A stretch of DNA of 64,000 nt from positions 124,001-188,000 of IMG/VR virus record IMGVR_UViG_3300027985_000843; one strand, 5' to 3'. Made by a program: the position numbers and the translations under genes. The notes under the pieces were generated by a model that did no database searches, was not told where the DNA came from, and saw only the letters and a program-made list of their open reading frames with translations. The first letter of the stretch is position 1; each line of letters opens with the position of its first letter. Shown piece by piece: positions 29,289 through 52,117 of this stretch.

Positions 29289-29330
29289 TATCTCGTCTCC
29301 TGTGCGTCTGGGTCTAGTCTCAACGACCTA

Positions 29331-30206
29331 TCAGTAGTAGTCGTCCCCCGAGTCCACCTTCACGGGGCTTGGGCTTGGTTCAGGGGCTGGAGCCGCTGAG
29401 GCACCCTTTGGGAAGAACAACCCATGCAGGTGGTTGGCTCGCGCTGCGTACTTCGCGAGGTCCTCTTGGGCCCAGGACTCCATCAGGTCCGTGCTGGCTG
29501 TGAGGCTCGCTACGCGTTGAGTCAGCTCGTAGACGTCGAGACGAGCCTGGACATGGTCGAACTGCTTGCCCGATTCCACGAGCTGCCCGATCTTCTCGTC
29601 GACGGCCGACATCTTTTCGAGGATGCCGCTGACCGTCTTCTCTCCCGGGTTCAGCACCTGAGCCACCTTCGCAGCATCCACGTCCTCGACCTGGGTCACT
29701 TCAGGAGGCCGGTCCACACCAGCATCGAAGACCTTCGCTCCAAGACCGAGATAGGCTGTGTTGCTGCTTTGGTCGACGACCTTCGCAACGAACTTCTGCA
29801 AGATGCCCACGCCCTCGGCCATCTTCTTGGCGGGCACACGACCCGCTACCCGGTTCAGGTTTCCGATGTGCTGTAGGATGTTGTCGAGATCAGAGCTGAT
29901 CGTATCCATCGTTTTTCCTTGGCTCGTCTGTCGATCCGTGGGGATAAAAGGATGCGCTACCGCCCACCTACTCCGGCGAGGGGCCAGAAGGCTCCACAGA
30001 CGATCTTCGTCCACGCGGAGCATGACCTCCTCGCCCTTGAGGAACTTGTTGAGGACCTCTCGGGCCTTCCTACTTCCCCCAAGGCAAGCCTTAACCACGA
30101 AGTTCAGGACGGAGACGGACCCAAGGTTAAACTTCTGGCCGTCAGGCGTGCGAACCCAATTGGTGGCCTTGTCCGAGCCGATTGTGACGAGCAAACGTGC
30201 ACCCAT
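29331..30206 (-). CDS. Hypothetical protein with possible internal in-frame start at 29909
   Basis: 291-aa open frame with host-like codon bias; AAGGA + A-rich spacer + ATG at 29909. Confidence 0.8.
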   Translation of the reverse strand: MGARLLVTIGSDKATNWVRTPDGQKFNLGSVSVLNFVVKACLGGSRKAREVLNKFLKGEEVMLRVDEDRLWSLLAPRRSRWAVAHPFIPTDRQTSQGKTMDTISSDLDNILQHIGNLNRVAGRVPAKKMAEGVGILQKFVAKVVDQSSNTAYLGLGAKVFDAGVDRPPEVTQVEDVDAAKVAQVLNPGEKTVSGILEKMSAVDEKIGQLVESGKQFDHVQARLDVYELTQRVASLTASTDLMESWAQEDLAKYAARANHLHGLFFPKGASAAPAPEPSPSPVKVDSGDDYY

Positions 30207-30248
30207 TCACCTTGGGTGGGGTACGAAAGCTCTATTGAAAAATCCAGC

Positions 30249-31055
30249 CTACAGCCGCACGAGGACTTTGACGAGGGCTTCCAAGGGCAACAGTGTGCCC
30301 TTCACCGGGCTGTACAGGAAAGTCCCAGTGCTCTTCCAATCAGAGGGCTCCCCCATGGCCGCCTCGGCCTCGTTCAGGACATCCGCCCCCTTCAAGAGGT
30401 CGAAGGCCAGCAAGAGGCTTTTGCGGGCCGCCAGGACGTGGAGCCGGTCCCCCCTCTGACGAACCAACGCCCCCTTCAAGAAGCCCTGCCGAAACAGCTC
30501 GACCCAACCCTTCCTCAGGTCCTTGTGCTGCGTCTTCGCCAGAACGAAACCAACCGTGCCCACATCCAGCAATTCCGGCATCGGAACCCTGGGAGGCAAG
30601 GCGGGATAGGCGTCTTCCGTTATCGCGTAGAAAATCCACTCCACGACCGTAGCCAGACGCTTGTGCTGCTCCGACAACGACAGCCCCTCGGGCAGGTAGC
30701 TCTTCAGCAGCTCGAAGAACCGACCCATGTCCGACGTGATGTGGGCGCAACCGGACTCTCCGTACGCCTCCACCAGATGGGCTGCCACTATGAAGTCGGG
30801 TGTCCTCGGGTGAATGGCGAGCTGCCGGTTGAGAAACAGGGCGATGGCGAGCAGAGTGCTCACCGAATCCACCGATCGAGTCAGAAACTTGAGGGGAAAG
30901 GGCTTCCCCATGATCAGGTCGGAGTAGAAGTCCCCCAGGGCGGGCAGCCCTGTGTAGACATAGGGTCCCTTGAAAGTACCGAAGGCCACAACTGTATCTC
31001 CGACAACACCATCGTGTTTCGGATCGACAACGACCTGGAACTCAAACTCCTCCAT
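30249..31055 (-). CDS. Degenerate DHH/DHHA1-like protein (function tentative)
   Basis: Start at ATG 31055 (MEEFEF). C-terminal LNEAE....W.....SP..GT.LP.E.L resembles phage DHH-like proteins as recalled; no DHH triad present. Confidence 0.45.
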   Translation of the reverse strand: MEEFEFQVVVDPKHDGVVGDTVVAFGTFKGPYVYTGLPALGDFYSDLIMGKPFPLKFLTRSVDSVSTLLAIALFLNRQLAIHPRTPDFIVAAHLVEAYGESGCAHITSDMGRFFELLKSYLPEGLSLSEQHKRLATVVEWIFYAITEDAYPALPPRVPMPELLDVGTVGFVLAKTQHKDLRKGWVELFRQGFLKGALVRQRGDRLHVLAARKSLLLAFDLLKGADVLNEAEAAMGEPSDWKSTGTFLYSPVKGTLLPLEALVKVLVRL

Positions 31056-31073
31056 GTCTGGAGGGTACACCAA

Positions 31074-32060
31074 CTAGTTGGCGACGGGACCGTAAAAGGC
31101 GTCGGCGTCATCCTCTGCGATGTCGCCCCACTCGGCCAGCTCTTCGGAGGCTGACCGCCTTCGAGACTGTTGCCACGCTCGCAGAGAGTCGTCGAAGACC
31201 TTGATGATCTCGGCGGCCTGCTCCTGTGTGAAGCGTCGTCGGAAGTCGTCCGGCCCGTTGGGCATGGGACCAAACTTTCGGTCGAGGTTGTGCTTCTGCC
31301 AGAGCCACGCCTTGCCACTCAGGTGGTACTTGAGACGCTCGATCTGAGCATCTGTTGGACCTCCTCCAGGATTCTGTTGTGGCCTCGGAGCAGGTTGCTG
31401 GCTCCGCTGGTCGTTCTGGATTCGGTCGTGCTCGGCACGAGCTTCGAACTCAGTCAACGCATCCCTGAGATGCGTGATGAGCCGAGAAGCTGATCCATCG
31501 CGACCACCATCGAGCATCGAGAAGTCTTTGGGCTCGGTGCTACCGTCGAGCCCAAAGTCCTTCCAGTGGATCTGACCTTGCAGCTTCCGCTGGAACACCA
31601 TGGATACCAGCTTCTGGATGAACTCCATTTGCTTGGGAGAAGGACCACTCGCCGCAGGAGCTACTCCTTCGGCCCTCTTCTCCCAGTAGTCCTCGCTGTC
31701 TTCGTAGATGTCGATGAGCTTGTCGACACGATCGTCAAGAGCCGATCGCCAGTTCTTGGTGCGCATCACAAGCACAATTCCGTGCTTCTTCTGCGTGGCC
31801 TTGGTCATCAGGTATTCGCCCTTACCCTTGACCTTCAGGCTGACCAGGAAGACCTCGATGGCATCGTCCCCTACCCCACGAACCTCTTCACGTCCAATGG
31901 ACAGGGAGGTGTGAATGCGAACCCCAACATTGGGTCCGACCTGGAGGGTGTAAGTCAGCTGGTTGCCGATCCGGCCCGGCTTCGGACGGTATGGACGGTA
32001 GGAGTTCATGACGAACTTCTCCATCTCATCCTTGGAGATCTCGACGTACCGATCAGCCAT
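31074..32060 (-). CDS. Hypothetical, possibly nucleic-acid-binding protein with two P[ST]xxQ helical repeats
   Basis: ATG 32060 overlaps the helicase stop, SD GAGGGAG. N-domain R.VG.DAI.V...RT.NWR; repeats GPSPKQMEFIQKL and GPTDAQIERLKYHL. Confidence 0.8.
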   Translation of the reverse strand: MADRYVEISKDEMEKFVMNSYRPYRPKPGRIGNQLTYTLQVGPNVGVRIHTSLSIGREEVRGVGDDAIEVFLVSLKVKGKGEYLMTKATQKKHGIVLVMRTKNWRSALDDRVDKLIDIYEDSEDYWEKRAEGVAPAASGPSPKQMEFIQKLVSMVFQRKLQGQIHWKDFGLDGSTEPKDFSMLDGGRDGSASRLITHLRDALTEFEARAEHDRIQNDQRSQQPAPRPQQNPGGGPTDAQIERLKYHLSGKAWLWQKHNLDRKFGPMPNGPDDFRRRFTQEQAAEIIKVFDDSLRAWQQSRRRSASEELAEWGDIAEDDADAFYGPVAN

Positions 32061-35000
32061 TGTCCACTCCCTCATTCCACCGAATCGAAGCCTCGACCAA
32101 GTCCTCTTCGGTCATGTCGTCCTCAGAGGGGTCGGCGCCCCACCAGATGGATGCGTCAGCAGCTGTCTTGGAGGTCACGCCGTCGACCGCTGCCGCAGCT
32201 TCGCCCGCCACACCTGCCGGGTTGACGTTCTCTCCTGGTGCCAAGCCCGCTTCCAACACGAACCGACTGATACCCGAAGGCTTGTTGTTCAACCTCTTCG
32301 GGCAGATGATCGTGAGGTTCTTCTCAGCACGAGTGATGGCAACATACCCAAGACGCCGTTCGTCTTCGAGTTGCTTCTGTTCCTTCTCGGGCGGAGGCGG
32401 GGGCTCGTCTGGTTTCGTGAACAGAGGCATGGGGAACTTGCTGTCCGGCATGGGGACGTAGACGTTCTTCCACTCCAGACCCTTCGTGCTGTGCACTGTG
32501 TTCAGGGACATGAAGTCCGAAGGCCCCTCAGGGAGGACCTCACCACGCTTGAGGGCCGCCTTGCGCTCCTCCTCTGTCGGGACTCGCAGGCTCTTGGCCC
32601 GATCTTCGTAGCGAAGCATCTTGGCGGCAAACCCTGCCGGCGTGTTGGGGTTCTGGGCCACGTCACCAGGATCCGTTGGATCGACTTCCGTGAGAAGATA
32701 CAGGAAGGACACGTTGCCCAAACCAAGTTCGGACGCGTTGACGTCTCCCACGGCTTCCTTGTCAACATTGTCTTCGTCGGTCGAGTTCCGGAGGTCCCCT
32801 TCGATGTTCTCACGAAGAGAAATCGACTTCCATTCGGAGCGGCCTGTTTCCTCGTTGATGGTAGGGACCTCACTGCGGATGTCCAGGATGGCACCGAACA
32901 AGTCCTTGGTGGTGGTCTCTTCCTTGTCAGCGTTGGCCTGAATCTCCATGAGTTCATCACGAAGGGCCTCGATCTTGCGCATGGCCGGCTTGATGCCGTT
33001 GTGGCTCTTGGCAAGCCTGCTCGCCAACATCTCGACGAAGACTCCGTCCCTGAGCGCCTTGATGGGGCTGATGGCACTCACATCCTCCCCCTTGCGACGG
33101 GCATACTCCCGGAAGACCCCCTTGACGATGTCAGGGCCTTCTTTGCCACGGAAGAAGCGCAGGGGTGAATCGATGACGTTGCCGAAGGACTCCTGCATCC
33201 TTTCGTAGTCGCTGCCCATGATCAGGTCGACGTACCCGAGCACAGCCTTCGCCTCTGAAGACTCCAAGAACCCCTTCCCGCCCTTTCGTTGGTAGGGGAC
33301 ACCTCGAACGATGCATGCTGTCTCGTAGGAATTCAGTTCGGCGTTGGTGCGGGTGAGAACAGCATGATTCTTGAACTCGTCACCATCGGGCCGATCCACT
33401 GCCGCCTTGACCCGATCGATCACGGAGATGGCTGCCGCTGCCTCGTCCACGGGAAGTTCGACTCGGATGGAGGCGTTGCCCGACTGACGTGCCGGGTTGG
33501 CGTTGGCCTCCATCGGAATCTGATCCTCGTTGTTGGCGATGAGCTTGTTGGCTGCCGTGATGATCTCAGGCTCGCACCGGTAGTTGGTTCGGATCATCCG
33601 AACCGTAAACTCCTCGTTCGTAGCCAGGGCAATGAACAGGTCAGGTCGAGCCCCACGGAAGCCGTAGATCGACTGCTTGTCGTCTCCCACCATCCACAGG
33701 GACCGACCATCCTTGCCGTCACCCACCTGTTCCGTGATGTAGCCGATGACCTCGTGCTGGATCGTGTTCATGTCCTGGCACTCGTCGACGATGACGTGGT
33801 CGAGTCCAGACTGAATCTTCTTCCTCGCGGCAGGGTTCCGGCGGAGAATGTCCCGAGCGATCGAGAGCTGATCATCGAAGTCGCCGGCTGGAACCAAGCG
33901 AGAGCGGTTGTTGTACTGAACAGTTCGGACAGACGCGAGGAAGGCTTCCCATTGAGTGGTTCGCCTGTTGGACGGAGGCCGACGTCCCCACTGCCTGGCC
34001 TTCTGGACATTCTCCTGGTGCTCTTCCTCGATCGCCTCTCGTTGGCGCTCTTCGCAAGGAGGTTCCCAGTTCTTGCCATTGGACGTCTTGAACTGGTTGT
34101 ACCATTCGTACCAGCGGGCTGCGAGGGCCTCTTCCTCGTTCTCAGCGATCTCTGCCGCCTTCTGCGGAGAAATGTCATTGCCCGCCCAAAGGCTCTTGTA
34201 CAACATCATGGTGCTGAGCGGTGGCACGTTTTCCTTGCCGTAGCAGGCGCCCCACACCTTGTTGACCCACCGACCAATCTTGCTGCCGTCTCCCGTGAAG
34301 GCGGCCTCTACTGCCATCTGTTCGTCTTCGTTGCCGAAGTCCTTGATGACTCGCAAGAAGGTCGAGTGCAGTGTGCCGAGCTTGCCCGACGCGTCCATGC
34401 GTTTGACCACGTCCTCACCAAGCGTGGGCTTGAGACGTTCTGCCAGCTCCTTGCCCGCCTTCTTGTTGAAGGTCGTGGCGAGGATCCTCGTGGGCGCCAC
34501 CCCCCGATCCAGGACCAAGTGGGAGATTCGAGCCACGGCCGTCCGTGTCTTGCCCGAACCGGCCGACGCTGCCACGAGCACCTTGCCGTCTGTGAGAGCA
34601 GCCGCTCGTTGCTCATCGTCGAGCCCCTTGAGGGTCTGGGGGATGTTCTGTGGGTTGGAAAGGTCGGTTACGGCCGTCAGAGCGGCCGCTGTTGCGATTC
34701 CCACCACCTCGGACTTCTTCGGGGGCACGTCGGGCTCCCCGCTCGCTTCTAGGGCCTTCTGAGCCTTGGCAGTGGCCTCTTGCTCTACGATGGCAACAGT
34801 TTCAGCCCGAGCAGCCTTGGCTTCCTGAATCTCCTCAGGGTCGACAGCCGCGAGCTGTCGAGCTTGCTGGGCCACGAGAGTGCTGGCCTGATCAGTCACC
34901 TCGCTCGCACCCACTTCCACGGGAGACACGAACTCGGGGAAGAATTCGTCCGCACGAAGGGGCCTCGCCACCTCGTCTGCCCAGTCAATCCACTTGCGGA

Positions 35001-35652: not shown

Positions 35653-35699
35653 CTTACCGACTCTCGGAGACAAGTAGAAACGCTATACCAGCACGTAAC

Positions 35700-35732
35700 A
35701 AGGCCCGGCGTCAACAGCTGACGTCGGGCCTT
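35700..35732 (-). terminator. GC-rich hairpin after HU, candidate intrinsic terminator
   Basis: AAGGCCCGACGTCA-loop-TGACGCCGGGCCTT, 13/14 paired; the U-tract is weak (CCTTGTT). Confidence 0.55.
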
Positions 35733-35751
35733 CGGCGACTACGGTCGAGGT

Positions 35752-36069: not shown

Positions 36070-36121
36070 GCTCCCCCATATACACCAAGACGGGGAAGTT
36101 ACAGAGCAAATTTTCACGAGG

Positions 36122-36859: not shown

Positions 36860-36906
36860 GTGGTCCTCGATGATAGGCGTTCACTCCTATCGAGGTCACA
36901 AGGAAA

Positions 36907-38199: not shown

Positions 38200-38205
38200 G
38201 CTTTC

Positions 38206-38263: not shown

Positions 38264-41200
38264 TTAAATCCTTGCTCTCAAGTTGAATGTCAGGACAATG
38301 TACAGAAGCGGGAAAATCGGCTGGTAGTACGACTCGTAGCGCATGATGGTCGGGTCATCCGGATCGACCGTTGCCGAGATACCGGTGAAGGCTCCGACGA
38401 TCTCCGCCTGAACGAGCTGCTTGAACAGCGAGGTCATCGAGACCTCGACCTCGTTCGTACGGCTGCTCAGGTACTTGGTTCCCACGAAGGAGTCGAGAAC
38501 CACACGGCTCTGTTGCTGCACGTAGTCGGCGATCTGCGTGACCGTCGGCAGACGGGTCAGAACGCTGGTCATGTCGGTCGTCAAACCCTGTCGGATTCGG
38601 ACGATCGGGGACAGGTCCTCCAGGAGCGTGATGCCCGCGACAGCCGTCTGGTTCATCTGGATCGGATCCAGGATGCGAGGCAGTCGAGTGAAGCCGATGA
38701 CGTGCCGACGCGTCCACGGGGTCGCGACGTCCACAGCCGGGGAGATCACCGCACCACCCACCGCAGCGGCGAGGAAGGTGCCGTCCACCAGAACCTCGAA
38801 GTTCTCTCCCAGCTCGTTGGTCAGGGTGACAACTGCCGAGTCCGGATAGACGGCCGCGATGCGGTTGCTCAAGAGAGCCTTGGCGATGGTCTGAGCACTG
38901 GTCGGAGAAGTCCCCGACGCAAACCCGATGATGCCCATTCGCTCCGACTGGTTCCGGATGTTCGACTGCGTTTCGCAGTGCTGCATCAGGAAGCTGTAGA
39001 CCGACGTGTCGGTGGACAGCGGGAGCAAAAGGTTGGGCCGGATGTTGCCCGGCAACGGAGTCGCCAGGTCAGCGATGGCGTTGTTGAAGCTCTGTGCCGA
39101 CGCCTGGTTGGTGTTGACCACCTTGAGCACCTGCTTGATGCCCACGAGGACTGCACCGTTCTGGATCGCCAGGTAGGATGCGAGGGTGACCCGGTTCTCT
39201 GCCGAGAGGGGGCCGAAGTTCGCCTCGATCGTCTTGAACTGCTGGTACAGACGCGTCGAGAAGTCCTGCTTCATGAACTTGTAGGTGATGTAGTAGTAGT
39301 CGCCGATGGCCGGTTCCAAACCGCTCGGGTCGAACGTCTGGACAGTCGCGGTGTCGTCCACTCCCACACCCACGGTGTCGGTGACCACCACTTCGAGGCC
39401 GCCGATCGAGAGCCACGGAACGGCCGGGTTGACCTGGAAGGTCGGCGAGACGATCATGGTGAAGTTGCCGGTCGGGGTGTAGGTCCCGGTGGCTGCTGCC
39501 AAGACGGTGAAGCGCAGACCCGTGGTAGCGTCCGTGTAGGTCTGACCGGGGATGCCGGTACCGGCGGACCCACTCGCGTTCGAGGAGGTCACGGTGAAGA
39601 TGTCGTGTGCGTCCTCTCCGTTGTCGCCGCTGGTGCCCGGGATGATCTCAGTCCCAGTACCCTCGATGAAGGCACTCGTGGTGCCCGTCGCGAAGGCGAT
39701 GGTCGAGGTCGTCGCACCCGTCGCGATCGACTCGATGGTGACGTAGTCCTGACCCTCGATCTGGCTCACATACGCGACACCATCGGTCACGAAGCTTGCC
39801 GTTGCCACGAGTTCGTCGACGATCTCCTGGGCCCCGACCTGCGTCCAGCTCGCTCGATCTCCCGAGGTGAAGCCAAGGACTGTCAGAGCGGTGGAGGTTG
39901 ACAAGATCTCGACACTCGAACCCGCGTTGAAGGTTGTGGAAGTGAGGCGGACCTTGTTGAGGTTGGCGAGAGTGCCAACCGATGCCACGCCTGTGACCAC
40001 AGAGTTGATGTCACCGGCGATCGTAGCCGCTGTCACCGCCGCGCCTGCCGTCAGGGTGACCTGGTAGTCGACACCGTCCACTCGGACGTCGAGCTGGTCG
40101 TCCACGCCCGCCGTGACCAGGAAGGGGCCGGCCTCGGTACCAAGGAGGGTGGCTGGCTTCGTGGTCGCCGTCGGAGTACCGCTGGCGCTCTGGAAGGTCT
40201 CGAACCCAAGGTACGTCTCCGCAGTGCCCTGACGAACAGCCACGGTCGAGGCGTGGTCGAAGCCGCCGGGGAGGGCCGCCGGGGTCGAGTAGGATTCGAT
40301 GATGATGAACGCGGCCGTCGCTCCGATGCTCACCGCCTGAGCGAGGGCATTCGGTGCGGTGGCCGTGAAGTCGATACCACCGGAACCTGAGAAGTCCGCC
40401 GCGTCGATGGCCGCATTGATGTCGGTGACGATCTGCGCAGGGGTCGGGTTCGGCAAGCCTGTCGTCAACGTGACGTCGATCTCGTTCGGCGAACCGTCGA
40501 TCGTGATCTTCAGGGAGTCGTTGACAGCGGCCGTGATGGTTGCCGTCAAGCTGCCCGCCGTCAGGGCGATGCGGCTGCCAACAAGATAACCCTTGGCGGC
40601 CGTGTCGAGGTCGGTGACGTAAGGGGTCCCATTGAGGGTCGTACGCCAGAAGTCCGAGGCCCCAGCGAACATGCTGTAGGGGGCGGGCCCTTCGTTCGTG
40701 TAGACGGCATTGAGAGCCGCCGACGAAGAGAAGGTCACCGTCACGATCTCAGCCACCGGGGTTCCCGCGCCTGTGTGGAACGCGTCCGGAATGGTCTCCA
40801 CACCTCGCGGCCACTGCACCGTCTCCGGCAGGCCGGTCTTGACCCCAAAGCGGCACTGGTACAGGTTCGTGGCGTACGTCGTCGAATACACTTCGTACTG
40901 ACCCACGCCCACGGACCCTGCCACCTTGTTGGTGAAGATGTAGGTGTCATCCGAGAGACGGGAGTACCAGAAGGTCGCGTAAGCGTTGTGGTCCGGCGGG
41001 ACCGCGTCCTTCAAGGTGATGGTGCGGGTGGTTGCATCCACCTGCGTCACGGTGACGGGGTTGCGGCCGAGCGCGTCGCGGAGGTCGCGACCGGTGTACA
41101 CGATGACGAGATCAGGCCGATTGGTGTTCAGGCCAACGCGGTTGTTGCTGATCGCGGTGTACACGGAAGACCCCAACGGGGTATCGCGGCCGTTACCCAA

Positions 41201-42559
41201 GGTGGGAATCTCGGGCAGCAAGAACTGATTGGGGCTCTGTACCGCCGGCACCACCGTGGTGTTGACCACCCGGGTGCACTCGGCGTTGTAGAGCTTGTCG
41301 TCCACGAGGGTCGGGATGATCTGGGTGTCGTCGAAGACGGTGGCCCCAGCCGTTCTGCTCGTCGAAGCAACCACGTAGCTCGCGCCCCAGTGGATGATCG
41401 ACACGTCCGCACTCGGGTTCGAGACAACGAAGTCTTGCTCTTCGATGTAGTCGTTGCGGTTCGGAGAGAACCCGCAGCGAATGACATCGGTGACCATCGT
41501 GTTGGGCAGGTAGTCGAAGGTGTCCTGCCAGGTGTTCGCCCAGTATTGGATGGTCACGGTCGAACCGCTCGCGGGCGGCTGCGACAGGGTCACAACGCCA
41601 TTGGTACCATCCACCGAGATGGGGATGACCTGCACGCCATTGACCATGACCACGACCTTGCTCGTATCCGTCGTGGTGATGCCGCCGTCGGTGCCATCGA
41701 CGATCGGACGCTGGAAGACACGGAAGGCTGTGTTGCGGCTCGTCTGGGCACCGGCTGCGAATCCGAGGATCCCGTTGGCGTTGCCGCTGCCGATGACGAT
41801 GCTCTGAGCCGCCGTGAGACGCAGGTGGCTGCCACCTTGCTCGTCCGTGTAGACGGAGGTCGTCAGGCCGGTGATGGCTGCCGCGTCGACAAGGGCCTTG
41901 AGGCCGGCGGCCGTGTAGGTTCCCGCTGCGAAGACGACCGTTGACTCGGAGCCGCCATCGATGGTCAGGGAGAACGTGTCGGTGGTGCTGAGCGTGATGG
42001 TGTACGTCGCTGCTGCGGGAGCCGTCAGGATGGCCTGTTCCGTCGTCACCTGGTCGGACACGATGTCCGTAAAGGCGGTGTCGCCACGGTGGAAGTAGTA
42101 GGTGCAACGAACGTTGGAGCCCACGGGCGGGGGCACCTGGAGGACGACGTAACCGCCGGTCCCCTGAACACTGCCAACTGCAACCTGCTGCCCGTCCACG
42201 GTCACGCTGACATGACGAGGGCTGTTCGCCGTACGCCCGAAGCCTTCACCGGTGACGATCGGGTAGTTGCGGACACGGAACCGGGAAACGGCACCGTTGG
42301 CTGCCCCCAGAACGGGGCTGTTGGGGTTCGTCGAGTCAACCACGAACCTTTGCGAGACATCCTCACTGACAATCTGCTGGTCCAGGGTGGCAGAAGAGCC
42401 ACGAACCAACTCCAGGTCCGGCTGCTCCAACTCTTCCTGTCCCACGCCGATGAGCACAGGGATTCTCAGCCCCGCGACCATGTTGGCCGCATTGGCTTCG
42501 GTGAGGGTGCGGGTGTAGATCCCAGGGGGTACGTACGTAGCGAGAGGTCCAAGAGCCAC
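38264..42559 (-). CDS. Tail sheath protein with very large insertions (1431 aa)
   Basis: N-terminal YVPPGIYT. C-terminal sheath domain (AGITLLE...IRQGLTT, PTV..IADYV, D..DPT.......YQPIFPL.YI...F). GTG start with AGGAG. Confidence 0.92.
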   Translation of the reverse strand: MALGPLATYVPPGIYTRTLTEANAANMVAGLRIPVLIGVGQEELEQPDLELVRGSSATLDQQIVSEDVSQRFVVDSTNPNSPVLGAANGAVSRFRVRNYPIVTGEGFGRTANSPRHVSVTVDGQQVAVGSVQGTGGYVVLQVPPPVGSNVRCTYYFHRGDTAFTDIVSDQVTTEQAILTAPAAATYTITLSTTDTFSLTIDGGSESTVVFAAGTYTAAGLKALVDAAAITGLTTSVYTDEQGGSHLRLTAAQSIVIGSGNANGILGFAAGAQTSRNTAFRVFQRPIVDGTDGGITTTDTSKVVVMVNGVQVIPISVDGTNGVVTLSQPPASGSTVTIQYWANTWQDTFDYLPNTMVTDVIRCGFSPNRNDYIEEQDFVVSNPSADVSIIHWGASYVVASTSRTAGATVFDDTQIIPTLVDDKLYNAECTRVVNTTVVPAVQSPNQFLLPEIPTLGNGRDTPLGSSVYTAISNNRVGLNTNRPDLVIVYTGRDLRDALGRNPVTVTQVDATTRTITLKDAVPPDHNAYATFWYSRLSDDTYIFTNKVAGSVGVGQYEVYSTTYATNLYQCRFGVKTGLPETVQWPRGVETIPDAFHTGAGTPVAEIVTVTFSSSAALNAVYTNEGPAPYSMFAGASDFWRTTLNGTPYVTDLDTAAKGYLVGSRIALTAGSLTATITAAVNDSLKITIDGSPNEIDVTLTTGLPNPTPAQIVTDINAAIDAADFSGSGGIDFTATAPNALAQAVSIGATAAFIIIESYSTPAALPGGFDHASTVAVRQGTAETYLGFETFQSASGTPTATTKPATLLGTEAGPFLVTAGVDDQLDVRVDGVDYQVTLTAGAAVTAATIAGDINSVVTGVASVGTLANLNKVRLTSTTFNAGSSVEILSTSTALTVLGFTSGDRASWTQVGAQEIVDELVATASFVTDGVAYVSQIEGQDYVTIESIATGATTSTIAFATGTTSAFIEGTGTEIIPGTSGDNGEDAHDIFTVTSSNASGSAGTGIPGQTYTDATTGLRFTVLAAATGTYTPTGNFTMIVSPTFQVNPAVPWLSIGGLEVVVTDTVGVGVDDTATVQTFDPSGLEPAIGDYYYITYKFMKQDFSTRLYQQFKTIEANFGPLSAENRVTLASYLAIQNGAVLVGIKQVLKVVNTNQASAQSFNNAIADLATPLPGNIRPNLLLPLSTDTSVYSFLMQHCETQSNIRNQSERMGIIGFASGTSPTSAQTIAKALLSNRIAAVYPDSAVVTLTNELGENFEVLVDGTFLAAAVGGAVISPAVDVATPWTRRHVIGFTRLPRILDPIQMNQTAVAGITLLEDLSPIVRIRQGLTTDMTSVLTRLPTVTQIADYVQQQSRVVLDSFVGTKYLSSRTNEVEVSMTSLFKQLVQAEIVGAFTGISATVDPDDPTIMRYESYYQPIFPLLYIVLTFNLRARI

Positions 42560-42590
42560 GGTGGTCTCCTTTTGCGAAGTGTTTCTTTTC

Positions 42591-42634
42591 TGGATCTGGG
42601 TCTAGGGCTTTTGGATCTGGGTCTGGATCTGGGT
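42591..42634 (-). repeat. Three near-tandem copies of ACCCAGATCC in the sheath 5' region
   Basis: Plus strand tggatctgggtct (42591), ttggatctgggtct (42611), ggatctgggt (42625). Confidence 0.85.
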
Positions 42635-42697
42635 ATTCATTTGGAGGTCGGATGCCCGTCCTCTACCCCCATCATGCGAACGAAAGCATTATCGAAG

Positions 42698-43111
42698 TCA
42701 GTCTTCGGCTACTTCGAACTGCCGGATCCGATCGACGATCTTCTTTCGTTCTGCGACGACGTTACCGCCCTCTTCGTACTCGATGGCGTTAGCGTAGGTT
42801 CGACGCCGAAGGGCTCGGGTGCCTCCGACCTCCCTCACCTTTTCCTTGACCTTCTCACGCTCGTCGTATTCTTCCCAACGTGCCTCGGCAGAACGTCCCA
42901 CAGCTTGGTCAGCCGTAGGGGAGTCATGCTTGGTCACGCCACTGTTGCCGGGAGTCGAACCAGGGGTGAAGTCAAAACCAAAGCCTTGTCCATCCCACTG
43001 GCGAGGGGCTTCCTCACCGCAGTCAGGGCAGACGTGCATGGAGTGGTTTCCGGCCTTGAGCGTGCGGGTGAACTGCACTCCGCACAAGCAGCTGAATGTG
43101 TACTGGGGCAT
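42698..43111 (-). CDS. FmdB-family zinc-ribbon protein
   Basis: MPQYTFSC.CG..F.........CP.CG. Confidence 0.8.
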   Translation of the reverse strand: MPQYTFSCLCGVQFTRTLKAGNHSMHVCPDCGEEAPRQWDGQGFGFDFTPGSTPGNSGVTKHDSPTADQAVGRSAEARWEEYDEREKVKEKVREVGGTRALRRRTYANAIEYEEGGNVVAERKKIVDRIRQFEVAED

Positions 43112-43129: not shown

Positions 43130-44299
43130 TTAGCTGATCTTCTCGTAGTCGCTGTTCCGGTCAATCAAGACTGCCCGGGTAGCGAAGAACAGGTCATCTG
43201 GTACCTGATGAATCCCTGAGGGCGCCGACGGATCTTCATCCCCGGCAGCTGTCACAGGCGTGACTCTGGACAAGGTGAGAGGTATGGGAATGTGGATCTC
43301 CCAGTCCGCTTGAACCTGCACAGACATTGACGCCTGATAGTACGAGTCGTCACCCGTTTCATCGGCGATCTCTTCCGATTCCCCGCCCATGGACACATCG
43401 ATCAACTCGATGCCCTCCAGGGCCAGCTTGGACCTCTTCTCGCCCCACAGGTACATAACCAGCAGGTCGGCGATCTCCTCCATCTGGTAGGGGTCACGAG
43501 CAATGACGTCGATATCGAAACTGGCTTCGAACTTCCCACCATACGCTTGAGCGGTGCTCACTCGATCGTCGTACACGACCACCGCAACCTTCTGACCTGC
43601 CTCTGCCCTCTTCCCGAAAGCCAAGACAACACCGGGCAAGGTCACACTGTCCGCAGAGTTCCACTTGAAGGGGATAGGGCCCCTAGACTCACCGGCATAT
43701 CGGTAGTCCGCTGTCACCAGCGAATCGGACGAGAATCGAGACAGGAACGTGATGGCTCCCGAGGGGGTCGCTGTGTAGTCTCGTCCCTCAAGAAGGGGGA
43801 ACTTCCGGTCCATCCACAAGCGAAGCGTGTTGGCAACCGGCTCTTGTTGGAGCTGCGCTGTGTGTTCCAATCCGCTCTGGAACAGGATGACGCCCTCGTC
43901 CTTCTGTGTGAGCAGAGGGTCCACAGCAAAGAACCCGATCTCGCCCGCGTCCGTGGGTGCCTGTAGGATCTCGATGAAATAGACCCCAGGGAGGGTTTGC
44001 AGGCCGTTCTCTTGGATGGCCCTCAGGTCTTCCCGGACCCACTCCAGCGGATAGACGGGGGAGCCGACGTACGCCAACATGACGTGGCTCAAGATCGTCC
44101 CCACGTAGTTGTCAGCCGAGAGCTGTACCTTGTTGGCGTTGGAACCCTTGACCACGATCCCGAACTGAGGCCGGCTGTCGAAGGCGAACTTGTTCTGGAT
44201 GTTTGGTGTGATCTTGCGGAAAACAGGATGCTTGCTGAAGCTGTCCTGAAGCTCCAGGAGGATGCGATTCTTGAGGGCGCCGATCAGGTAGTAGAACAC
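43130..44299 (-). CDS. Putative tail terminator/completion protein
   Basis: 389 aa upstream of the sheath. F.IDVIARDP....EIADL...YL and Y.AS.SV.V..DW fit a tail-terminator fold; assignment partly positional. Confidence 0.6.
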   Translation of the reverse strand: MFYYLIGALKNRILLELQDSFSKHPVFRKITPNIQNKFAFDSRPQFGIVVKGSNANKVQLSADNYVGTILSHVMLAYVGSPVYPLEWVREDLRAIQENGLQTLPGVYFIEILQAPTDAGEIGFFAVDPLLTQKDEGVILFQSGLEHTAQLQQEPVANTLRLWMDRKFPLLEGRDYTATPSGAITFLSRFSSDSLVTADYRYAGESRGPIPFKWNSADSVTLPGVVLAFGKRAEAGQKVAVVVYDDRVSTAQAYGGKFEASFDIDVIARDPYQMEEIADLLVMYLWGEKRSKLALEGIELIDVSMGGESEEIADETGDDSYYQASMSVQVQADWEIHIPIPLTLSRVTPVTAAGDEDPSAPSGIHQVPDDLFFATRAVLIDRNSDYEKIS

Positions 44300-45333
44300 T
44301 ACTCGTCCTCGTATTCCTCGACAGCCAACACCAGAAGACCCTCAGCCACCGCTGTCAACGGATTGGCGGCAGCCCGTATGTCGGAAACGTCGATCGGGAA
44401 TCCGTCCTTCTGAATCTTCGAGAATTGCTGCTTGAAGACATCCATGAACCCTTCGACCTTGGACGTGCCGCCGGACACGATGAAGGGAATCGGTTCCAGA
44501 AGCTCCACCTCACCCCGGTTCTTGCTGAACTGGGCGGCGACGTTCTTCAGGCAGTAGTCGATGAGTGCCCGTACGTAGAGCGCAATGGCCTCTTGCTCGC
44601 GATTCTTGGGCTTCGTGAGGTTGACCCCCTTCTCCTTCACGGCACATATCTGAGCGGCCGTTCTGCCCACCGCACGGCCCGATTGTGCGTCCACCCAATC
44701 TCCGCCCCGAGCGAGGGAGAAGTCCATGGCCTGCGTCGCCTGGTAGCTCAGAGCCACATTGCACATACCGGCCCCGAAGCTCACGGCCAGGCCGTTGAAC
44801 ATGTCCTCGGCGCACTGACTGTAGACGATTGCCATGGCCTCATTCGTGGGGTGGGCCTGGTAACCAAGCTCATCCACGATGCGCCGGAAGACTTCCGTGT
44901 GGTAGATGATGTCCTGGCTCGGATCGTCAATCGGCGAAGACGGGACCGAGTAGAAGCAATGCTCTTTCGACTGGACAGGGTCCTGCAAGACGTGATGGAT
45001 CAAGATGCTCAGGATTTCCTGAGCATCGATCTCACCGGACGAGATGACACCCTTGCTCAGAGGGCGACGGGCCTCCCGCTTGAACAGGTTCGCCATCGTC
45101 AGAACGCTGTCCCCAATCACGATGAGCTTGCCGTCCTTCTCGACGTAGTCCACGCTGCTCATCTTGAGGCTTCGCTTGGCCGACATGTCGAGATCCAGGA
45201 AGGCGTCCCGGACCTGACTGACTCGCGTCGCATCGTCGAGCCCTCGACGAGCGGACACGATGTTCATCGTCCCGATATCGAGCCCCACGCCGGGCTTGTA
45301 TGCCTGCTCGGGCTCCACTTTCTTGTTACTCAT
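44299..45333 (-). CDS. Actin-fold ATPase, volactin-like
   Basis: Phosphate-1 GLDIGTMN, connect-1 P.NEAMA..YS, phosphate-2 VSFGAGMCNV, ARGGDWVD, adenosine VSGGTS..EGF, connect-2 PL.AVA.G. Confidence 0.9.
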   Translation of the reverse strand: MSNKKVEPEQAYKPGVGLDIGTMNIVSARRGLDDATRVSQVRDAFLDLDMSAKRSLKMSSVDYVEKDGKLIVIGDSVLTMANLFKREARRPLSKGVISSGEIDAQEILSILIHHVLQDPVQSKEHCFYSVPSSPIDDPSQDIIYHTEVFRRIVDELGYQAHPTNEAMAIVYSQCAEDMFNGLAVSFGAGMCNVALSYQATQAMDFSLARGGDWVDAQSGRAVGRTAAQICAVKEKGVNLTKPKNREQEAIALYVRALIDYCLKNVAAQFSKNRGEVELLEPIPFIVSGGTSKVEGFMDVFKQQFSKIQKDGFPIDVSDIRAAANPLTAVAEGLLVLAVEEYEDE

Positions 45334-45379
45334 CTAGTCCTCGTTTTCTCTGAATTTGGATCTGGGTCTCGTAGTCGAA

Positions 45380-46018
45380 TCAGCTACGATCGTAGCTGTA
45401 AACGACTTGACGACTTCGTTGCGTCAAGAGGTAGACGAACTCCTCGTGCTTGCTGGCGATGCCCTGAAGAAGGTCGTCCAAGCCTTCGGTCAGTGCCCCT
45501 GACGCCTCGATGTGCTTCTTGATGGTCGTGAGTGCCTTGATCAGCATCGTCTCGGCGTTCAAGGAGAGGGCAACGAGGGCGTTGGGCTCGGGGGCTCCCT
45601 TGTGCCCAAAGCGTTGCTTCCACGTCTCAAGGATGGTGTGCATGCTGTGGACCTGGTCGCACAGGCAAACCTTCGAGGGGTCGCCAGTCAGGCCAACGAG
45701 TCTCTCCGCCAGCCCGTCGATGCCCTCTTGGCTGTCGTTGTACAGACGCTCGAACAGCAGGTGGTCTCCGTAGTAGGCATGCCCCCGCGTCTGCCAGTGG
45801 GCCGTCTGGTGGACCATGGCAAGGAGGCGCAAGCCCACCAAGAGCTGAGACAGAGCGTCGTAGGGACTCTTCGGCTTCGGCACGTCGTAGTAGGCGGCAC
45901 TCTTGTTGACGTATTCGCGAGCCTCCCGACGCTGGACAGCTGTCACCGGAAGATACGGCGGGCCGTCGCGCATCGGGTCGTAGTCCATAGGGTCACGCCA
46001 CACTGCATCCGTGCTCAT
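45380..46018 (-). CDS. Ferritin/Dps-like four-helix protein (DUF5856-like)
   Basis: HQTAHWQTRG..YYGDHLLFERLY......D.LAER ... LL..IA..HE..VYLL; ~50-aa N-terminal extension. Confidence 0.8.
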   Translation of the reverse strand: MSTDAVWRDPMDYDPMRDGPPYLPVTAVQRREAREYVNKSAAYYDVPKPKSPYDALSQLLVGLRLLAMVHQTAHWQTRGHAYYGDHLLFERLYNDSQEGIDGLAERLVGLTGDPSKVCLCDQVHSMHTILETWKQRFGHKGAPEPNALVALSLNAETMLIKALTTIKKHIEASGALTEGLDDLLQGIASKHEEFVYLLTQRSRQVVYSYDRS

Positions 46019-46041
46019 GACACACCTCTCGAATCAATGGA

Positions 46042-46725
46042 TTAGGCGGGCTTGCCCTTGGCCCGACCCTTCTTCAATTCCCGAAGTGACGACGCAGCTC
46101 CCTTGACGGTGGACCCTTCCAGAACGTCCACTTTTTTGGTCTGGATGTTCGTCTCAGCGTCTTGCGGCTGAATCGTGTCGGGGATGAAGACAGGGATGTC
46201 GCCACCCACAGCCTGGAGGGCTTCCTGGACACCCTCGACCACGGACACTTGCCCCGAGCCCAGTCGAGACAGCATGCCCACGATGGTCTCCAGCTTCTTC
46301 GTGTGGTCCTCTTGGAGGGACGAGTTGTGCTTCTGTGCCGCCGCGAGTTCCGTCAGGGCATCGGTCAACCGACCCTGGACCAACAGAAAGTCCTGACGGG
46401 CCTTCTCCGCTTCTTGCCGAGCCGAGACCAGTTCTTGCTTGGCCGCCTCCAGCTCGGACTTCAGTTGGTCAACCTCTTCCTTCGAGGCTGCCGGCACGCT
46501 GACGGGAGTGGCCTTTGGCGCCGGCCTAACGGCCCCAGATTGGCCTTTCAAGAGGAACAGGCGCTTCTGGTCGATCCCAATCCACAAGTCCCGGGAACGG
46601 TGTGCCTCGTCCGCCGGAATGTGTACTGCGACTCGATAGGGCACCGGGAGCTTGAGATCCTCGATGACGTGAGTACCTGTGACCATGCCCACTACTGTGT
46701 AGGTGCCCTGCGTTGGGTTGTTCAT
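46042..46725 (-). CDS. Hypothetical coiled-coil protein
   Basis: 227 aa; central heptad run EVDQLKSELEAAKQELVSARQEAEKARQD; C-terminal PVFIP. Confidence 0.8.
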   Translation of the reverse strand: MNNPTQGTYTVVGMVTGTHVIEDLKLPVPYRVAVHIPADEAHRSRDLWIGIDQKRLFLLKGQSGAVRPAPKATPVSVPAASKEEVDQLKSELEAAKQELVSARQEAEKARQDFLLVQGRLTDALTELAAAQKHNSSLQEDHTKKLETIVGMLSRLGSGQVSVVEGVQEALQAVGGDIPVFIPDTIQPQDAETNIQTKKVDVLEGSTVKGAASSLRELKKGRAKGKPA

Positions 46726-48613: not shown

Positions 48614-48904
48614 CTACGCAGAAGGCTTGTCCTCAGCCATCTCGAAGGCCCCTGTCTTGGGATCGATCTCGATAACGGTGCCCGGAGCGAAGCCCCTCTC
48701 CGTGAGGATCTTGTTGAAGATCTCGTCCCGCTGCTGATCCAGGCGGCGAATGGTCGCGAGGATCTGTACCTTCCGTAGGTCGATATCGATGCCCTCGATC
48801 GAGAGCTGCGTGCGGAACTTCACGATGTGGTCGAGCTGGCTCAGAACCTCCTGAGACACAGGGGTGTTCTGGGGGATTCTGACGTCATCATTTTCAGTAG
48901 GCAT
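48614..48904 (-). CDS. Hypothetical 96-aa protein
   Basis: ATG with GGAG; helical core; GC3-biased codons. Confidence 0.75.
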   Translation of the reverse strand: MPTENDDVRIPQNTPVSQEVLSQLDHIVKFRTQLSIEGIDIDLRKVQILATIRRLDQQRDEIFNKILTERGFAPGTVIEIDPKTGAFEMAEDKPSA

Positions 48905-48928
48905 GGTTCATCTCCATCTGGTTTTTGG

Positions 48929-50925: not shown

Positions 50926-51309
50926 TCAATCCTCCGTGACGGTCAGCTGCCCGGTAGGAAACCTCAGCTGGTCGGAGGTCAAGATCTCCCTGCTGGCCGT
51001 GAGGTTGGCGTAGTAGAGCATGTTGCCCGCCGAGGCCGCATCGAACAGAGCGTATGCCACGATGGTGCCCCAGTCCCCCGTAGCTATCGGAAAGGTCACA
51101 TCGGCACTGTTGCTGACACTGTCAGGCGAGGGAGCCGTGAAGGTCACGGACTGCCTGGCGTACGCGCCACCAGACACTTCCGTCCCCCCGCCTGTCTCAT
51201 CCGGTGCGACCGTGAAGAGTCCCACGTAGACGGTGGTGGGGGAGCTGTATGCCGTGTTCCTCAACACATGGTTGAGAAGCTGCGTTTCGAGGTAGTTGGT
51301 CTTGCTCAT
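50926..51309 (-). CDS. Phage fibre-base-like protein (MS.YLE..LL.H family)
   Basis: MSKTNYLETQLLNH....Y.SP..VYVGLFT.AP...GGG.EVSGG.YARQ...FP.AT..WGT....LFDA...GN. Confidence 0.8.
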   Translation of the reverse strand: MSKTNYLETQLLNHVLRNTAYSSPTTVYVGLFTVAPDETGGGTEVSGGAYARQSVTFTAPSPDSVSNSADVTFPIATGDWGTIVAYALFDAASAGNMLYYANLTASREILTSDQLRFPTGQLTVTED

Positions 51310-51323
51310 GGGTCTCACTCGGA

Positions 51324-51344
51324 GAGGCTCATAAAAAGAGCCTC
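51324..51344. promoter_or_regulatory. 7-bp perfect inverted repeat with A/T loop upstream of the fibre-base gene
   Basis: GAGGCTC-ATAAAAA-GAGCCTC. Confidence 0.35.
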
Positions 51345-51356
51345 AGGCGAAGACCC

Positions 51357-51746
51357 TCAAGGTCGCGTGAAAGCTGCCCGAAGGCTCGTTTCCGCTTGGG
51401 GAAGGTTCACGACGTTGTAGTCCTGAGCCATGATCTGCGTGCCGGCAGTGTAGTTGATGATCACCCGCCAGAAACCGATCGCGTTGGGGCGCCACCGAAC
51501 ACTGTAGAACCCCGGGCTACCGGTGATCTCTGTCCAGTACAAGACACCTGAGCGGACCTGGCTGTCTTGGGTGGTCGTACCATCGACCAACGTCCAGGGC
51601 TGCAAGGCGTTGTTGAAGAACACCTGGTGAGTCAAGTCACCTACGACCAAGCCGACCTTTCGAGTGAATTCGTCTACCTCGAAGAAGTCGGGCTGGTCAT
51701 AAGCCACCTGACTGGTCTGGATGAGCTGTTGTCCACGGGTAATCAC
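51357..51746 (-). CDS. Hypothetical Ig-like virion protein
   Basis: 129 aa, GTG start with GGAGG; G.YSVRW....G.WR resembles the neighbouring Ig-like domains. Confidence 0.75.
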   Translation of the reverse strand: MITRGQQLIQTSQVAYDQPDFFEVDEFTRKVGLVVGDLTHQVFFNNALQPWTLVDGTTTQDSQVRSGVLYWTEITGSPGFYSVRWRPNAIGFWRVIINYTAGTQIMAQDYNVVNLPQAETSLRAAFTRP

Positions 51747-51764
51747 TTCTGCCTCCGAGGGATC

Positions 51765-52016
51765 CTACGGCATGTGGCAGATTGACTTCAGACTCTTGAT
51801 CGCATCGGCGAACGGCAGTGCCTCCACGCGCCCGGTCCGATTGAACCAAGCAGTCTTCAGCTCCTCGATGTTGGTCACCGAGGAGTCGAAGACGAAAGTC
51901 ACTTTGTTGTTGCCGCTTCGATCGGTCCGAAGCATCCGTGCCCCCGCAACCTGAAGGTAGGCTGCGAAGTAGAGATCACACGTCCGGAACTCGTCCGGGT
52001 TCAGGTTCTTGCTCAT
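51765..52016 (-). CDS. DUF5659-like small protein (possible winged-helix regulator)
   Basis: F.T.DLYFAAYL...G.......R......F.F ... F..AIK.LK. Start ATG 52016. Confidence 0.65.
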   Translation of the reverse strand: MSKNLNPDEFRTCDLYFAAYLQVAGARMLRTDRSGNNKVTFVFDSSVTNIEELKTAWFNRTGRVEALPFADAIKSLKSICHMP

Positions 52017-52117
52017 CTGATCTTCTCTTGGTCTGGGCACAGAGTGCCTGTAGTCGTTTCGGGTTCGAGTTCTGGATCTGTGTTTTCATCTTCATTTGCC
52101 GTCAGAGGCTACTGGTA

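What the first reader, a model, noticed from the sequence alone, without database searches (positions are those of the whole stretch)
29307..52082. Shared AGACCCAGA(TCC) motif upstream of sheath (x3), tube, actin and DUF5659 genes
The plus-strand core tctgggtct occurs at 42595 and 42616 (a third copy, tctgggt, at 42628) before the sheath, at 29307 (18 nt before the tube start), and at 45357-45369 (tggatctgggtct, 23 nt before the actin start). Variants lie at 52028 and 52071 before the DUF5659-like gene. All are in short intergenic gaps, on the same strand, ahead of genes likely needed in high or matched amounts. Inference: an operator or mRNA site coordinating sheath, tube and actin. The DUF5659-like protein, with variants in its own leader, is a candidate autoregulated binder.
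Basis: partly seen in the sequence, partly recalled or inferred. Interest (0 to 1): 0.65.

Follow-up and report, generated by a model that had tools for sequence, protein, structure and literature searches.

The report
Hexamer-repeat signal before phage late operons
The motif is real: it is a piece of a strand-specific array of short repeats spaced six bases apart, conserved across a large group of uncultured giant phages in front of their main late gene blocks, and it looks like an undescribed expression signal whose reader is unknown.

Summary
AGACCCAGA occurs six times in the 372-kb phage genome, and four copies lie on the gene strand in the sheath, tube and actin leaders.

The 9-mer is only one facet of a larger element. 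That element is a run of ARAY cores spaced 6 nt apart (sometimes 5 or 7), with unit consensus CCAGAT, usually starting 0-3 nt after a GC-rich hairpin.

In relatives the array is conserved in these leaders:
- sheath: 22 of 27 by score, almost all by eye;
- the cement gene that heads the major-capsid operon: 30 of 59 by score;
- DUF5659: 36 of 67;
- the gene after the tube: 5 of 9.

The actin leader carries it only in the closest subclade. The tube leader does not (0 of 11). It is almost never antisense (1 of 395) and is rare in coding DNA. It is not coding and matches no Rfam family.

I lean towards an RNA leader array read by a multimeric protein (0.4). A late-promoter or operator array in DNA is nearly as likely (0.35). 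No transcript data exist to decide between them.

DUF5659 as the binder stays untested. It co-occurs with the array across phages, but its fold shows no nucleic-acid-binding relative, and distant DUF5659 genes lack the array.

The parts
42588..42644 (-). Sheath leader arrays. The distal run spans 42615-42644 and includes CCAGAT, CCAGAC, CCAGAT. The proximal run spans 42588-42605 (CTAGAC, CCAGAT, CCAGAA) and ends 28 nt before the GTG at 42559.
   Evidence: PWM 23.9, the best in the genome. Orthologous leaders score in 22 of 27 relatives.
42644..42663 (-). Hairpin directly 5' of the distal sheath run: GAGG/CCTC outer stem and CGG/CCG inner stem.
   Evidence: Relatives carry different hairpin sequences at the same place. 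The 44 nt before the first run fold better than shuffles in all three leader families.
42676..42693 (-). Conserved box GATAAT plus a T-rich stretch, just after the stop of the zinc-ribbon gene (TGA at 42698-42700). It is a possible -10 element that would place the arrays inside the transcript.
   Evidence: variants such as TGATAAT..CTTTCGTT and TAGTTCTTTTGTT recur at the 5' edge of relatives' sheath leaders. Its function is inferred, not shown.
38264..42559 (-). Tail sheath gene, 1431 aa.
   Evidence: tblastn to annotated tail sheaths, including Tunturi_5 (33%), LR745208 (40%), phage G and Mycobacterium phages.
45348..45371 (-). Actin leader array of four in-phase units (CGAGAC, CCAGAT, CCAAAT, TCAGAG), ending 14 nt before the ATG at 45333. 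It follows the palindrome at 45382-45397.
   Evidence: PWM 20.7. Conserved only in the close subclade L003, L004, L005, L006, L027; 4 of 19 by score.
44299..45333 (-). Actin-like gene, 344 aa.
   Evidence: Pfam Volactin PF25216, E 4.7e-74.
29306..29322 (-). Tube leader: three AGAC cores spaced 5 and 6 nt apart. This is weak and is not a conserved array.
   Evidence: PWM below 12. A similar sequence occurs only in L027, and 0 of 11 orthologous leaders score.
28551..29288 (-). Probable tail tube gene, 245 aa.
   Evidence: homologue of the Tunturi_5 'virion structural protein'. Atlas look-alikes in tail-tube clusters. My own fold failed.
28508..28537 (-). Array in the 133-nt gap after the tube gene, which is the leader of the 391-aa gene 27242-28417. 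In this genome it pairs with a downstream TTCGTC-rich strand.
   Evidence: fold z -1.95. Orthologous leaders score in 5 of 9 relatives, and by eye nearly all carry AGAT/AGAC runs.
52058..52099 (-). DUF5659 leader array: four strict units (52076-52099), then three relaxed units. A hairpin follows (52036-52048), then AGAC/AGAT cores (52017-52036) next to the ATG at 52016.
   Evidence: PWM 17.7. Orthologous leaders score in 36 of 67 relatives, against 2 antisense and 1 and 0 in controls.
51765..52016 (-). DUF5659 gene, 83 aa from the ATG at 52016.
48910..48927 (-). Weaker run (CAAAAA, CCAGAT, GGAGAT) directly before the 96-aa gene 48614-48904.
   Evidence: PWM 16.0. One relative (G002) has a similar run at the orthologue's start. 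The run overlaps the ribosome-binding site, so it may be coincidence.
42698..43111 (-). Zinc-ribbon protein gene (137 aa) directly upstream of the sheath leader. It is conserved in relatives and is an alternative candidate reader, by inference only.
   Evidence: Zn_ribbon_8, E 1.5e-5, below the Pfam cut-off. Orthologues found in 16 relatives.

Best explanation
The motif is part of a cis-acting array in the leaders of a few late operons of a large clade of jumbo phages. The array is a run of ARAY cores in direct repeat, spaced 6 nt apart (tolerating 5-7). The unit consensus is CCAGAT. Runs often open with CCCAGAT or CTAGAY, start 0-3 nt after a GC-rich hairpin, and often come as two clusters.

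I propose that the array is transcribed and read as single-stranded RNA by a multimeric protein, with one subunit per core. This is the logic of TRAP on its (G/U)AG repeats. The proposed effect is on the output of the operon behind it, through translation, mRNA stability or read-through.

Shown: the anatomy, the strand specificity, the conservation, the non-coding nature, and which genes carry it.
Inferred: that it acts as RNA, that a protein reads it, and what the effect is.
For: - Enrichment. In 1.02 Mb of this genome plus relatives there are 36 strict runs in the 10% that is intergenic, against 14 in coding DNA. All 36 are on the strand of the downstream gene.
- Conservation. Arrays recur in otherwise unalignable orthologous leaders: sheath 22/27, gene after the tube 5/9, DUF5659 36/67, cement gene 30/59. 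Roughly 300 other gene upstreams give 1 hit, and antisense gives 1 of 395.
- Spacing, measured without a model. Core-to-core distance on the sense strand peaks at 6 (49, 51 and 77 cases in the three families), with shoulders at 5 and 7. Antisense and coding controls are flat. Strictly head-to-tail repeats with a tolerance of 1 nt fit the reading of a flexible single strand better than phased contacts on duplex DNA.
- Not coding. The units fall in all three phases relative to the start (cement 5/5/6). The downstream reading frame is closed between array and start in 23 of 26 cases. A 1-nt indel separates this genome from L004 just before a shared CAAAAGCCCTAG.
- Pairing. Arrays are less base-paired than the rest of the leader (0.47 against 0.575, p 0.02). 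The sheath leader is less folded than its shuffles (z +1.2).
- Flanking hairpins keep their place while their sequence changes.
- A conserved GATAAT/T-rich box lies upstream of the arrays in sheath leaders.
- In the leader after the tube gene, the array and the start region sit in conserved stems.
Against: - No transcript data exist. No public RNA run holds this phage, so it is not shown that the arrays are transcribed.
- The arrays sit at heads of operons, while the abundant major capsid and tube genes lack them. That fits a promoter as well as an RNA signal.
- In 60 cement-gene leaders the array keeps a fixed place. Its last T lies 7 nt before a conserved A of an ACCCCAGC box, 30-38 nt before the start. 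This is promoter-like geometry.
- No other motif shared by late leaders was found.
- The lower pairing of the arrays may simply follow from their A-rich, G-poor composition.
- The start region is sequestered only in the leader after the tube gene.
Confidence: 0.4

Rival explanations
1. The array is a DNA signal: either the late promoter itself, read by host RNA polymerase with the phage's own sigma-like factor, or an operator or activator array overlapping that promoter. On this reading the hairpin just upstream is the terminator of the preceding unit.
For: - Location at heads of late operons: cement then major capsid, sheath, DUF5659, and the gene after the tube. The capsid and tube genes themselves lack it.
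- Fixed geometry in 60 cement leaders. The last AGAT ends 7 nt before a conserved C-A, 30-38 nt before the start. In some genomes a second ACCCCAG copy lies near -35.
- A hairpin lies 0-3 nt upstream.
- The phage encodes a sigma-70-like ORF and no RNA polymerase beta subunit.
- The early and middle genes use a different, clear motif, GGTGTA-N3-T, that is scarce in the late cluster.
- No other shared late motif was found.
- Fur boxes are a precedent for 6-bp arrays on DNA (my own knowledge).
Against: - The unit number varies from 2 to 7, and there are two or three clusters per leader.
- Spacing slips to 5 or 7 nt.
- No single unit is better conserved than the others.
- The hairpins lack T-runs, and the sigma-70 and terminator scans are at chance level.
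- In actin leaders the whole gap is 35-47 nt, which would leave a 5' UTR of only about 10 nt.
- In DUF5659 leaders, cores abut the ribosome-binding site.
- All repeats are direct, not the inverted repeats expected of a dimeric duplex binder.
Confidence: 0.35
2. The array is a passive leader feature with no dedicated protein. It is an unstructured, A-rich, G-poor stretch that serves as a ribosome standby or enhancer site, or as a nuclease entry site.
For: The arrays are less paired than their flanks. They contain 42% A and 16% G. The sheath leader is less folded than its shuffles. The arrays lie 14-60 nt before starts.
Against: A composition constraint alone would not keep a four-base core in a 6-nt register across 27-67 diverged leaders while the two spacer bases vary freely. 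The most abundant proteins, capsid and tube, lack it.
Confidence: 0.1
3. The array is a centromere-like site for the actin-like protein, as parC is for ParM and ParR.
For: An array of direct repeats lies just upstream of the actin gene in this genome and five close relatives.
Against: The actin leader is the least conserved site (4 of 19). The best conserved arrays are at the sheath, cement and DUF5659 genes, up to 30 kb away. The gene after the actin gene is a 389-aa protein with no family match, not a small adaptor.
Confidence: 0.04
4. The motif is chance, low-complexity DNA or hidden coding sequence, such as Pro-Asp or Glu-Asp repeats.
For: Read in one frame, the units give PDPD or EDEN strings. 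Some coding hits are GAAGAC-type codon repeats.
Against: Shuffles give about 1 run per genome against 10 observed. The frame is not conserved, stops intervene, and unit phases are random. The conserved positions include what would be a third codon position, A.
Confidence: 0.02

Closest known systems
TRAP binding sites in Bacillus trp leaders: 9-11 (G/U)AG triplets with 2-3 nt spacers, wrapped around an 11-mer ring
   Same: Head-to-tail short cores in a leader, a period of 5-6 nt with slack, free spacer bases, sense strand only, and flanking hairpins whose formation matters.
   Different: The core here is four bases (ARAY) with mostly C before AG. Runs are shorter (2-7 units) and split into clusters. 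No TrpBP homologue is encoded. Action at the RNA level is not shown.
Fur boxes read as arrays of NAT(A/T)AT hexamers on duplex DNA
   Same: A 6-bp unit ending in AT, at least three units, variable array length, placed at promoters.
   Different: Fur hexamers occur in both orientations. Here all units point one way, and spacing slips to 5 or 7 nt. No iron-related context.
Start-associated sequences (SAS and extended SAS) of Cluster K mycobacteriophages, and the stoperators of phage L5 (recalled from memory)
   Same: Phage-wide, orientation-specific short motifs in small intergenic gaps near gene starts or stops, found by genome reading. The function is partly (SAS) or fully (stoperators) tied to gene expression.
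   Different: Those are single 13-17-bp sites at many genes. This is a tandem 6-nt array at only about 5-7 leaders per genome.
Phage Mu Com acting on the mom leader, and lambda nut sites (a linear box plus a hairpin)
   Same: A small phage protein (zinc-binding in Mu) reads a linear RNA element beside a hairpin at the head of a late transcript. Here a zinc-ribbon gene sits directly before the sheath leader.
   Different: No sequence similarity. Start-site sequestration is seen only in the leader after the tube gene. No binding was tested.

Membership tests
TRAP-type RNA repeat site | A TrpBP-family ring protein is present. | tested here: not met
   PF02081 search of the genome: no match at E 0.1. 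The control genome Bacillus subtilis was found.
TRAP-type RNA repeat site | Nine or more (G/U)AG triplets with 2-3 nt spacers. | tested here: not met
   Units are NNARAY, and position 2 is C in 34 of 64 units. Runs have 2-7 units.
Any Rfam RNA family | A match to a covariance model. | tested here: not met
   No hit at gathering score in the window. No hit at E up to 1 in the sheath, DUF5659 or cement leaders.
Sigma-70 type promoter | TTGACA-like and TATAAT-like hexamers 16-18 nt apart, with A at position 2 and T at position 6 of the second hexamer. | tested here: not met
   The scan of 27000-46500 gives 6 sites against 3.3 expected, and none lies at the sheath or actin arrays. The units lack the A-N3-T spacing of the -10 element that the phage's own GGTGTA-N3-T motif shows.
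Phage-specific late promoter | Transcription starts a fixed short distance downstream. | not testable with these tools
   No RNA run holds the phage. The geometry in cement leaders is compatible with this.
Intrinsic terminator (for the hairpins before the arrays) | A GC-rich stem followed by a T-run. | tested here: not met
   The stems are there, but they are followed by CYTAGAT-type sequence rather than T-runs. The terminator scan is at chance and none lies at these sites.
parC-type centromere of an actin partition system | A repeat array beside the actin gene, plus a small adaptor gene downstream. | tested here: not met
   The array at the actin gene is kept in only 4 of 19 relatives. The next gene encodes a 389-aa protein with no family match.
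Fur-type hexamer operator | Hexamers in mixed orientation on duplex DNA with a strict 6-bp register. | tested here: not met
   All units are direct repeats on one strand. Spacings of 5 and 7 nt are common.
DUF5659 as a nucleic-acid-binding protein | A fold related to a known DNA- or RNA-binding domain. | tested here: inconclusive
   The model has pLDDT 84.7. Best Foldseek E is 0.3. Best VIA Z is 4.0, below the noise level the tool itself states.

The most novel reading that the evidence does not exclude
A clade-wide RNA code for late phage gene expression. A phage-encoded ring or filament protein would read ARAY cores spaced 6 nt apart in the leaders of the capsid, sheath and DUF5659 operons, and so time or balance virion production. 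Candidates are the DUF5659 protein, which carries the array in its own leader, or the zinc-ribbon protein next to the sheath leader. This would be a new RNA-protein regulatory pair, analogous to TRAP but unrelated to it, spread over hundreds of uncultured jumbo phages.
Probability: 0.25. Interest if true: 0.75.

Novelty: new variant of a known kind. Interest (0 to 1): 0.55.

Why it matters
Almost nothing is known about how uncultured jumbo phages control late genes. This element is a simple, countable marker for the heads of their main late operons in several hundred contigs. The major capsid search alone found 531 relatives.

If the array is an RNA site, it adds a new protein-RNA recognition scheme. 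If it is a promoter or operator, it defines the late promoter class of this clade and gives the phage sigma-like factor a target.

Either way it yields concrete, cheap tests: gel shifts on RNA and on DNA, reporters, and 5'-end mapping. It also helps annotate operon structure in metagenomic phage genomes.

Tried and rejected
- Near-identical DNA in GenBank phages: none.
- Coding reading of the repeats: rejected.
- Rfam: no match.
- TRAP and Hfq homologues in the genome: none.
- RNA polymerase beta: none.
- Public RNA runs: none hold the phage, and the only holders are DNA runs that may be its source.
- DUF5659 fold search: no significant neighbour. No paper mentions DUF5659. The Tunturi paper has nothing on promoters.
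- Tube fold: the model failed at pLDDT 30. A profile search of solved structures gave nothing for the tube or the 391-aa protein.
- The T-rich box as a general late promoter: found in only 10 of 35 late leaders against 27 of 177 others, so not established.
- Sequestration of the ribosome-binding site as a general feature: seen only in the leader after the tube gene, 0.71 against 0.63.
- GATC (Dam) sites as the real signal: rejected. The base after AGAT is C in only about half of the units, and many units are AGATG, AGATT or AAAT.
- Pairing of GAUCCA with the 16S 3' tail: rejected, because GATCC is not conserved in relatives.
- One literature search failed on a syntax slip. The repeat found nothing relevant.
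Full report
**Setting.** The window is bases 124,001-188,000 of a single 371,739-bp contig at 59% GC. It is an IMG/VR virus record judged 78% complete. Its only public holders are DNA runs labelled hydrothermal vent metagenome, or simply metagenome. All called genes in the window lie on the minus strand.

- 38264-42559 is a 1431-aa tail sheath.
- 44299-45333 is an actin of the Pfam Volactin family, E 4.7e-74.
- 51765-52016 is a DUF5659 protein.
- 28551-29288 is probably the tail tube. It is homologous to a Tunturi_5 virion protein and has look-alikes in tail-tube clusters of the ESM Atlas. My own model of it failed.

**The observation.** Every coordinate is right. The exact 9-mer occurs 5 times in the window against 0.63 expected. 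It occurs 6 times in the whole genome, with 4 copies on the gene strand in three leaders. So the 9-mer is very local and is not a genome-wide promoter word.

**What the motif really is.** I fetched 34 related loci through the sheath protein, at 55-82% identity. Their sheath leaders cannot be aligned with this one. Nearly all of them nevertheless carry runs of six-base units such as CCAGAT, CCAAAT, TCAGAT, GTAGAC and GAAGAT.
- Units taken from strict runs have A, R, A, Y at positions 3-6 by the selection rule used to find the runs. The first two positions, which the rule leaves free, prefer C.
- A test with no model confirms the register. The distance between successive ARAY cores on the sense strand peaks sharply at 6 nt, with 49, 51 and 77 cases in the sheath, cement and DUF5659 leader sets. 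There are shoulders at 5 and 7. Antisense strands and coding controls are flat.
- Lag-6 autocorrelation is also the maximum in sheath leaders.

**Enrichment and strand.** This genome plus relatives make 1.02 Mb. In that DNA, 36 strict runs of three or more units lie in the 10% that is intergenic, and 14 lie in coding DNA. All 36 intergenic runs are on the strand of the gene downstream. With a position weight matrix, 35 of 395 gene upstreams in relatives score on the sense strand and 1 scores on the antisense strand. Shuffled genomes give about one run, against ten observed.

**Which genes carry it.** In this genome the strong arrays precede four genes:
- the sheath (PWM 23.9);
- a 207-aa gene just outside the window, with its array at genome 200,082-200,099 (21.7);
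- the actin (20.7);
- DUF5659 (17.7).

Weaker arrays precede a 96-aa gene (16.0) and the 391-aa gene after the tube (13.9). The tube leader scores below 12.

The 207-aa protein looks like a capsid cement protein. The next gene is the major head protein (phrog_2522, E 3e-53). That array therefore heads the cement-capsid pair.

Conservation in relatives is as follows:
- sheath, 22 of 27 by score and nearly all by eye;
- cement gene, 30 of 59 non-redundant leaders at score 14 or more, and most of the others carry GAAT-type variants at the same place;
- DUF5659, 36 of 67, against 2 antisense and 1 and 0 in flanking controls;
- 391-aa gene, 5 of 9;
- actin, 4 of 19, all in the closest subclade;
- tube, 0 of 11;
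- about 300 other genes, 1 hit.

**Anatomy.** The first run usually begins 0-3 nt after a GC-rich hairpin. The hairpin sequence differs between relatives, and the 44 nt before the run fold better than shuffles: -16.6 against -10.0 kcal/mol for DUF5659 leaders, -11.5 against -7.8 for cement, and -10.2 against -7.5 for sheath. Sheath, DUF5659 and 391-aa leaders usually hold two clusters.

In sheath leaders a GATAAT/T-rich box follows the stop of the upstream zinc-ribbon gene and precedes the hairpin and arrays. In cement leaders the array keeps a fixed place. Its last T lies 7 nt before the conserved A of an ACCCCAGC box, which lies 30-38 nt before the start. In several genomes a second ACCCCAG copy lies upstream of the array.

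**Not coding.** Unit phases relative to the start codon are spread over all three frames. The downstream frame is closed between array and start in 23 of 26 cases. A one-base indel between this genome and L004 shifts the repeats relative to a shared downstream string.

**Mechanism.** Two readings survive.

For an RNA array read by a multimer:
- The repeats are strictly direct.
- The spacing has 1 nt of slack.
- The copy number varies and there are multiple clusters.
- The arrays pair less than their flanks (0.47 against 0.575, p 0.02).
- The sheath leader is under-folded (z +1.2).
- A possible promoter box lies upstream of the arrays in sheath leaders.
- In the leader after the tube gene, conserved stems involve the array and the start region.

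For a DNA signal (late promoter or operator array):
- The arrays sit at operon heads, while the capsid and tube genes lack them.
- The geometry in cement leaders is fixed.
- A hairpin lies just upstream.
- The phage encodes a sigma-like ORF and no polymerase beta subunit.
- No other shared late motif was found.
- The phage's other clear promoter word, GGTGTA-N3-T, is scarce in the late cluster.

I lean to RNA (0.40 against 0.35), mainly because of the direct repeats with slack spacing. Only 5'-end data can settle the question, and none exist.

**The proposed binder.** DUF5659 is single-copy here. It is present in 9 of 10 large array-bearing relatives and absent from Tunturi_5 and LR745208, which also lack the array. 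That fits the idea, but any clade-specific gene would show the same pattern.

Its model is confident (pLDDT 84.7; strand, helix, two strands, two helices). The model has no significant structural neighbour. DUF5659 homologues at 46-52% identity in other phages have ordinary leaders without arrays. The idea is therefore neither supported nor excluded.

The zinc-ribbon gene directly before the sheath leader is an equally plausible candidate. That rests on analogy with Mu Com only.

**Comparison with known systems.** The element matches no Rfam family. It works like TRAP sites in layout, or like Fur hexamer arrays if it acts as DNA. It fails the defining features of both; see the membership test. 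Among phage genome motifs it most resembles the start-associated sequences and stoperators of mycobacteriophages in how it was found and where it sits, but not in form.

**Verdict.** This is a real, conserved, undescribed cis element of late operon leaders in a large jumbo-phage clade. The regulatory reading is supported in general, the gene set is corrected, and the binder remains open.

Noticed in passing
whole genome; in the window, the leader of 35752-36069: GGTGTA-N3-T occurs 82 times in intergenic DNA on both strands, mostly outside the late cluster. In about 25 genes its end lies exactly 10-11 nt before the ATG, often in divergent pairs (TACACC .. GGTGTA). This looks like a -10 element that gives leaderless early or middle transcripts.
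   Followed up: partly
outside the window, genome 351,600-352,900: A CRISPR-like array of about 18 copies of a 36-nt repeat, with a period of 71-75 nt and unique spacers. No cas genes were searched for.
   Followed up: partly
window 44299-45333: The phage actin belongs to Pfam Volactin, a family named for a haloarchaeal actin (E 4.7e-74). It is conserved beside the sheath in relatives. No paper on a phage volactin was found.
   Followed up: partly
window 28418-28550: The leader of the 391-aa gene after the tube folds into a 19-bp stem between the GAYGAA-type array and a TTCGTC-rich strand. A second stem covers the ribosome-binding site and start. Both are kept in L027 and L004, with changes on both sides in other relatives. 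This hints at translational control of that gene.
   Followed up: partly
window 32053-38199 and 45380-46018: DNA-handling genes sit inside the tail gene block: a UvrD-type helicase (32053-35652), an HU-like protein (35752-36069), a protein with a Ros/MucR zinc-finger domain (36907-38199), and a Dps/ferritin-like protein next to the actin.
   Followed up: no
genome 199,412-200,035 and 198,484-199,365 (L037:11412-12035 and 10484-11365): The major head protein is 91-97% identical across 80 fetched contigs, and 531 relatives were found. The sheath of the same phages is only 55-82% identical. This is an unusually frozen capsid gene.
   Followed up: no
DUF5659 and 391-aa leaders in relatives (for example L042, L044, L045): The start context is strongly conserved as AGATGAGGATG, then 3-6 nt, then A(G/A)ATG. 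That is, ARAY cores flank the GAGGA ribosome-binding site and overlap the start codon.
   Followed up: no
window 50926-51309: A 127-aa protein matches Pfam Gp80, a podophage GP4 fibre protein (E 8.6e-47), inside a myophage-like tail region.
   Followed up: no
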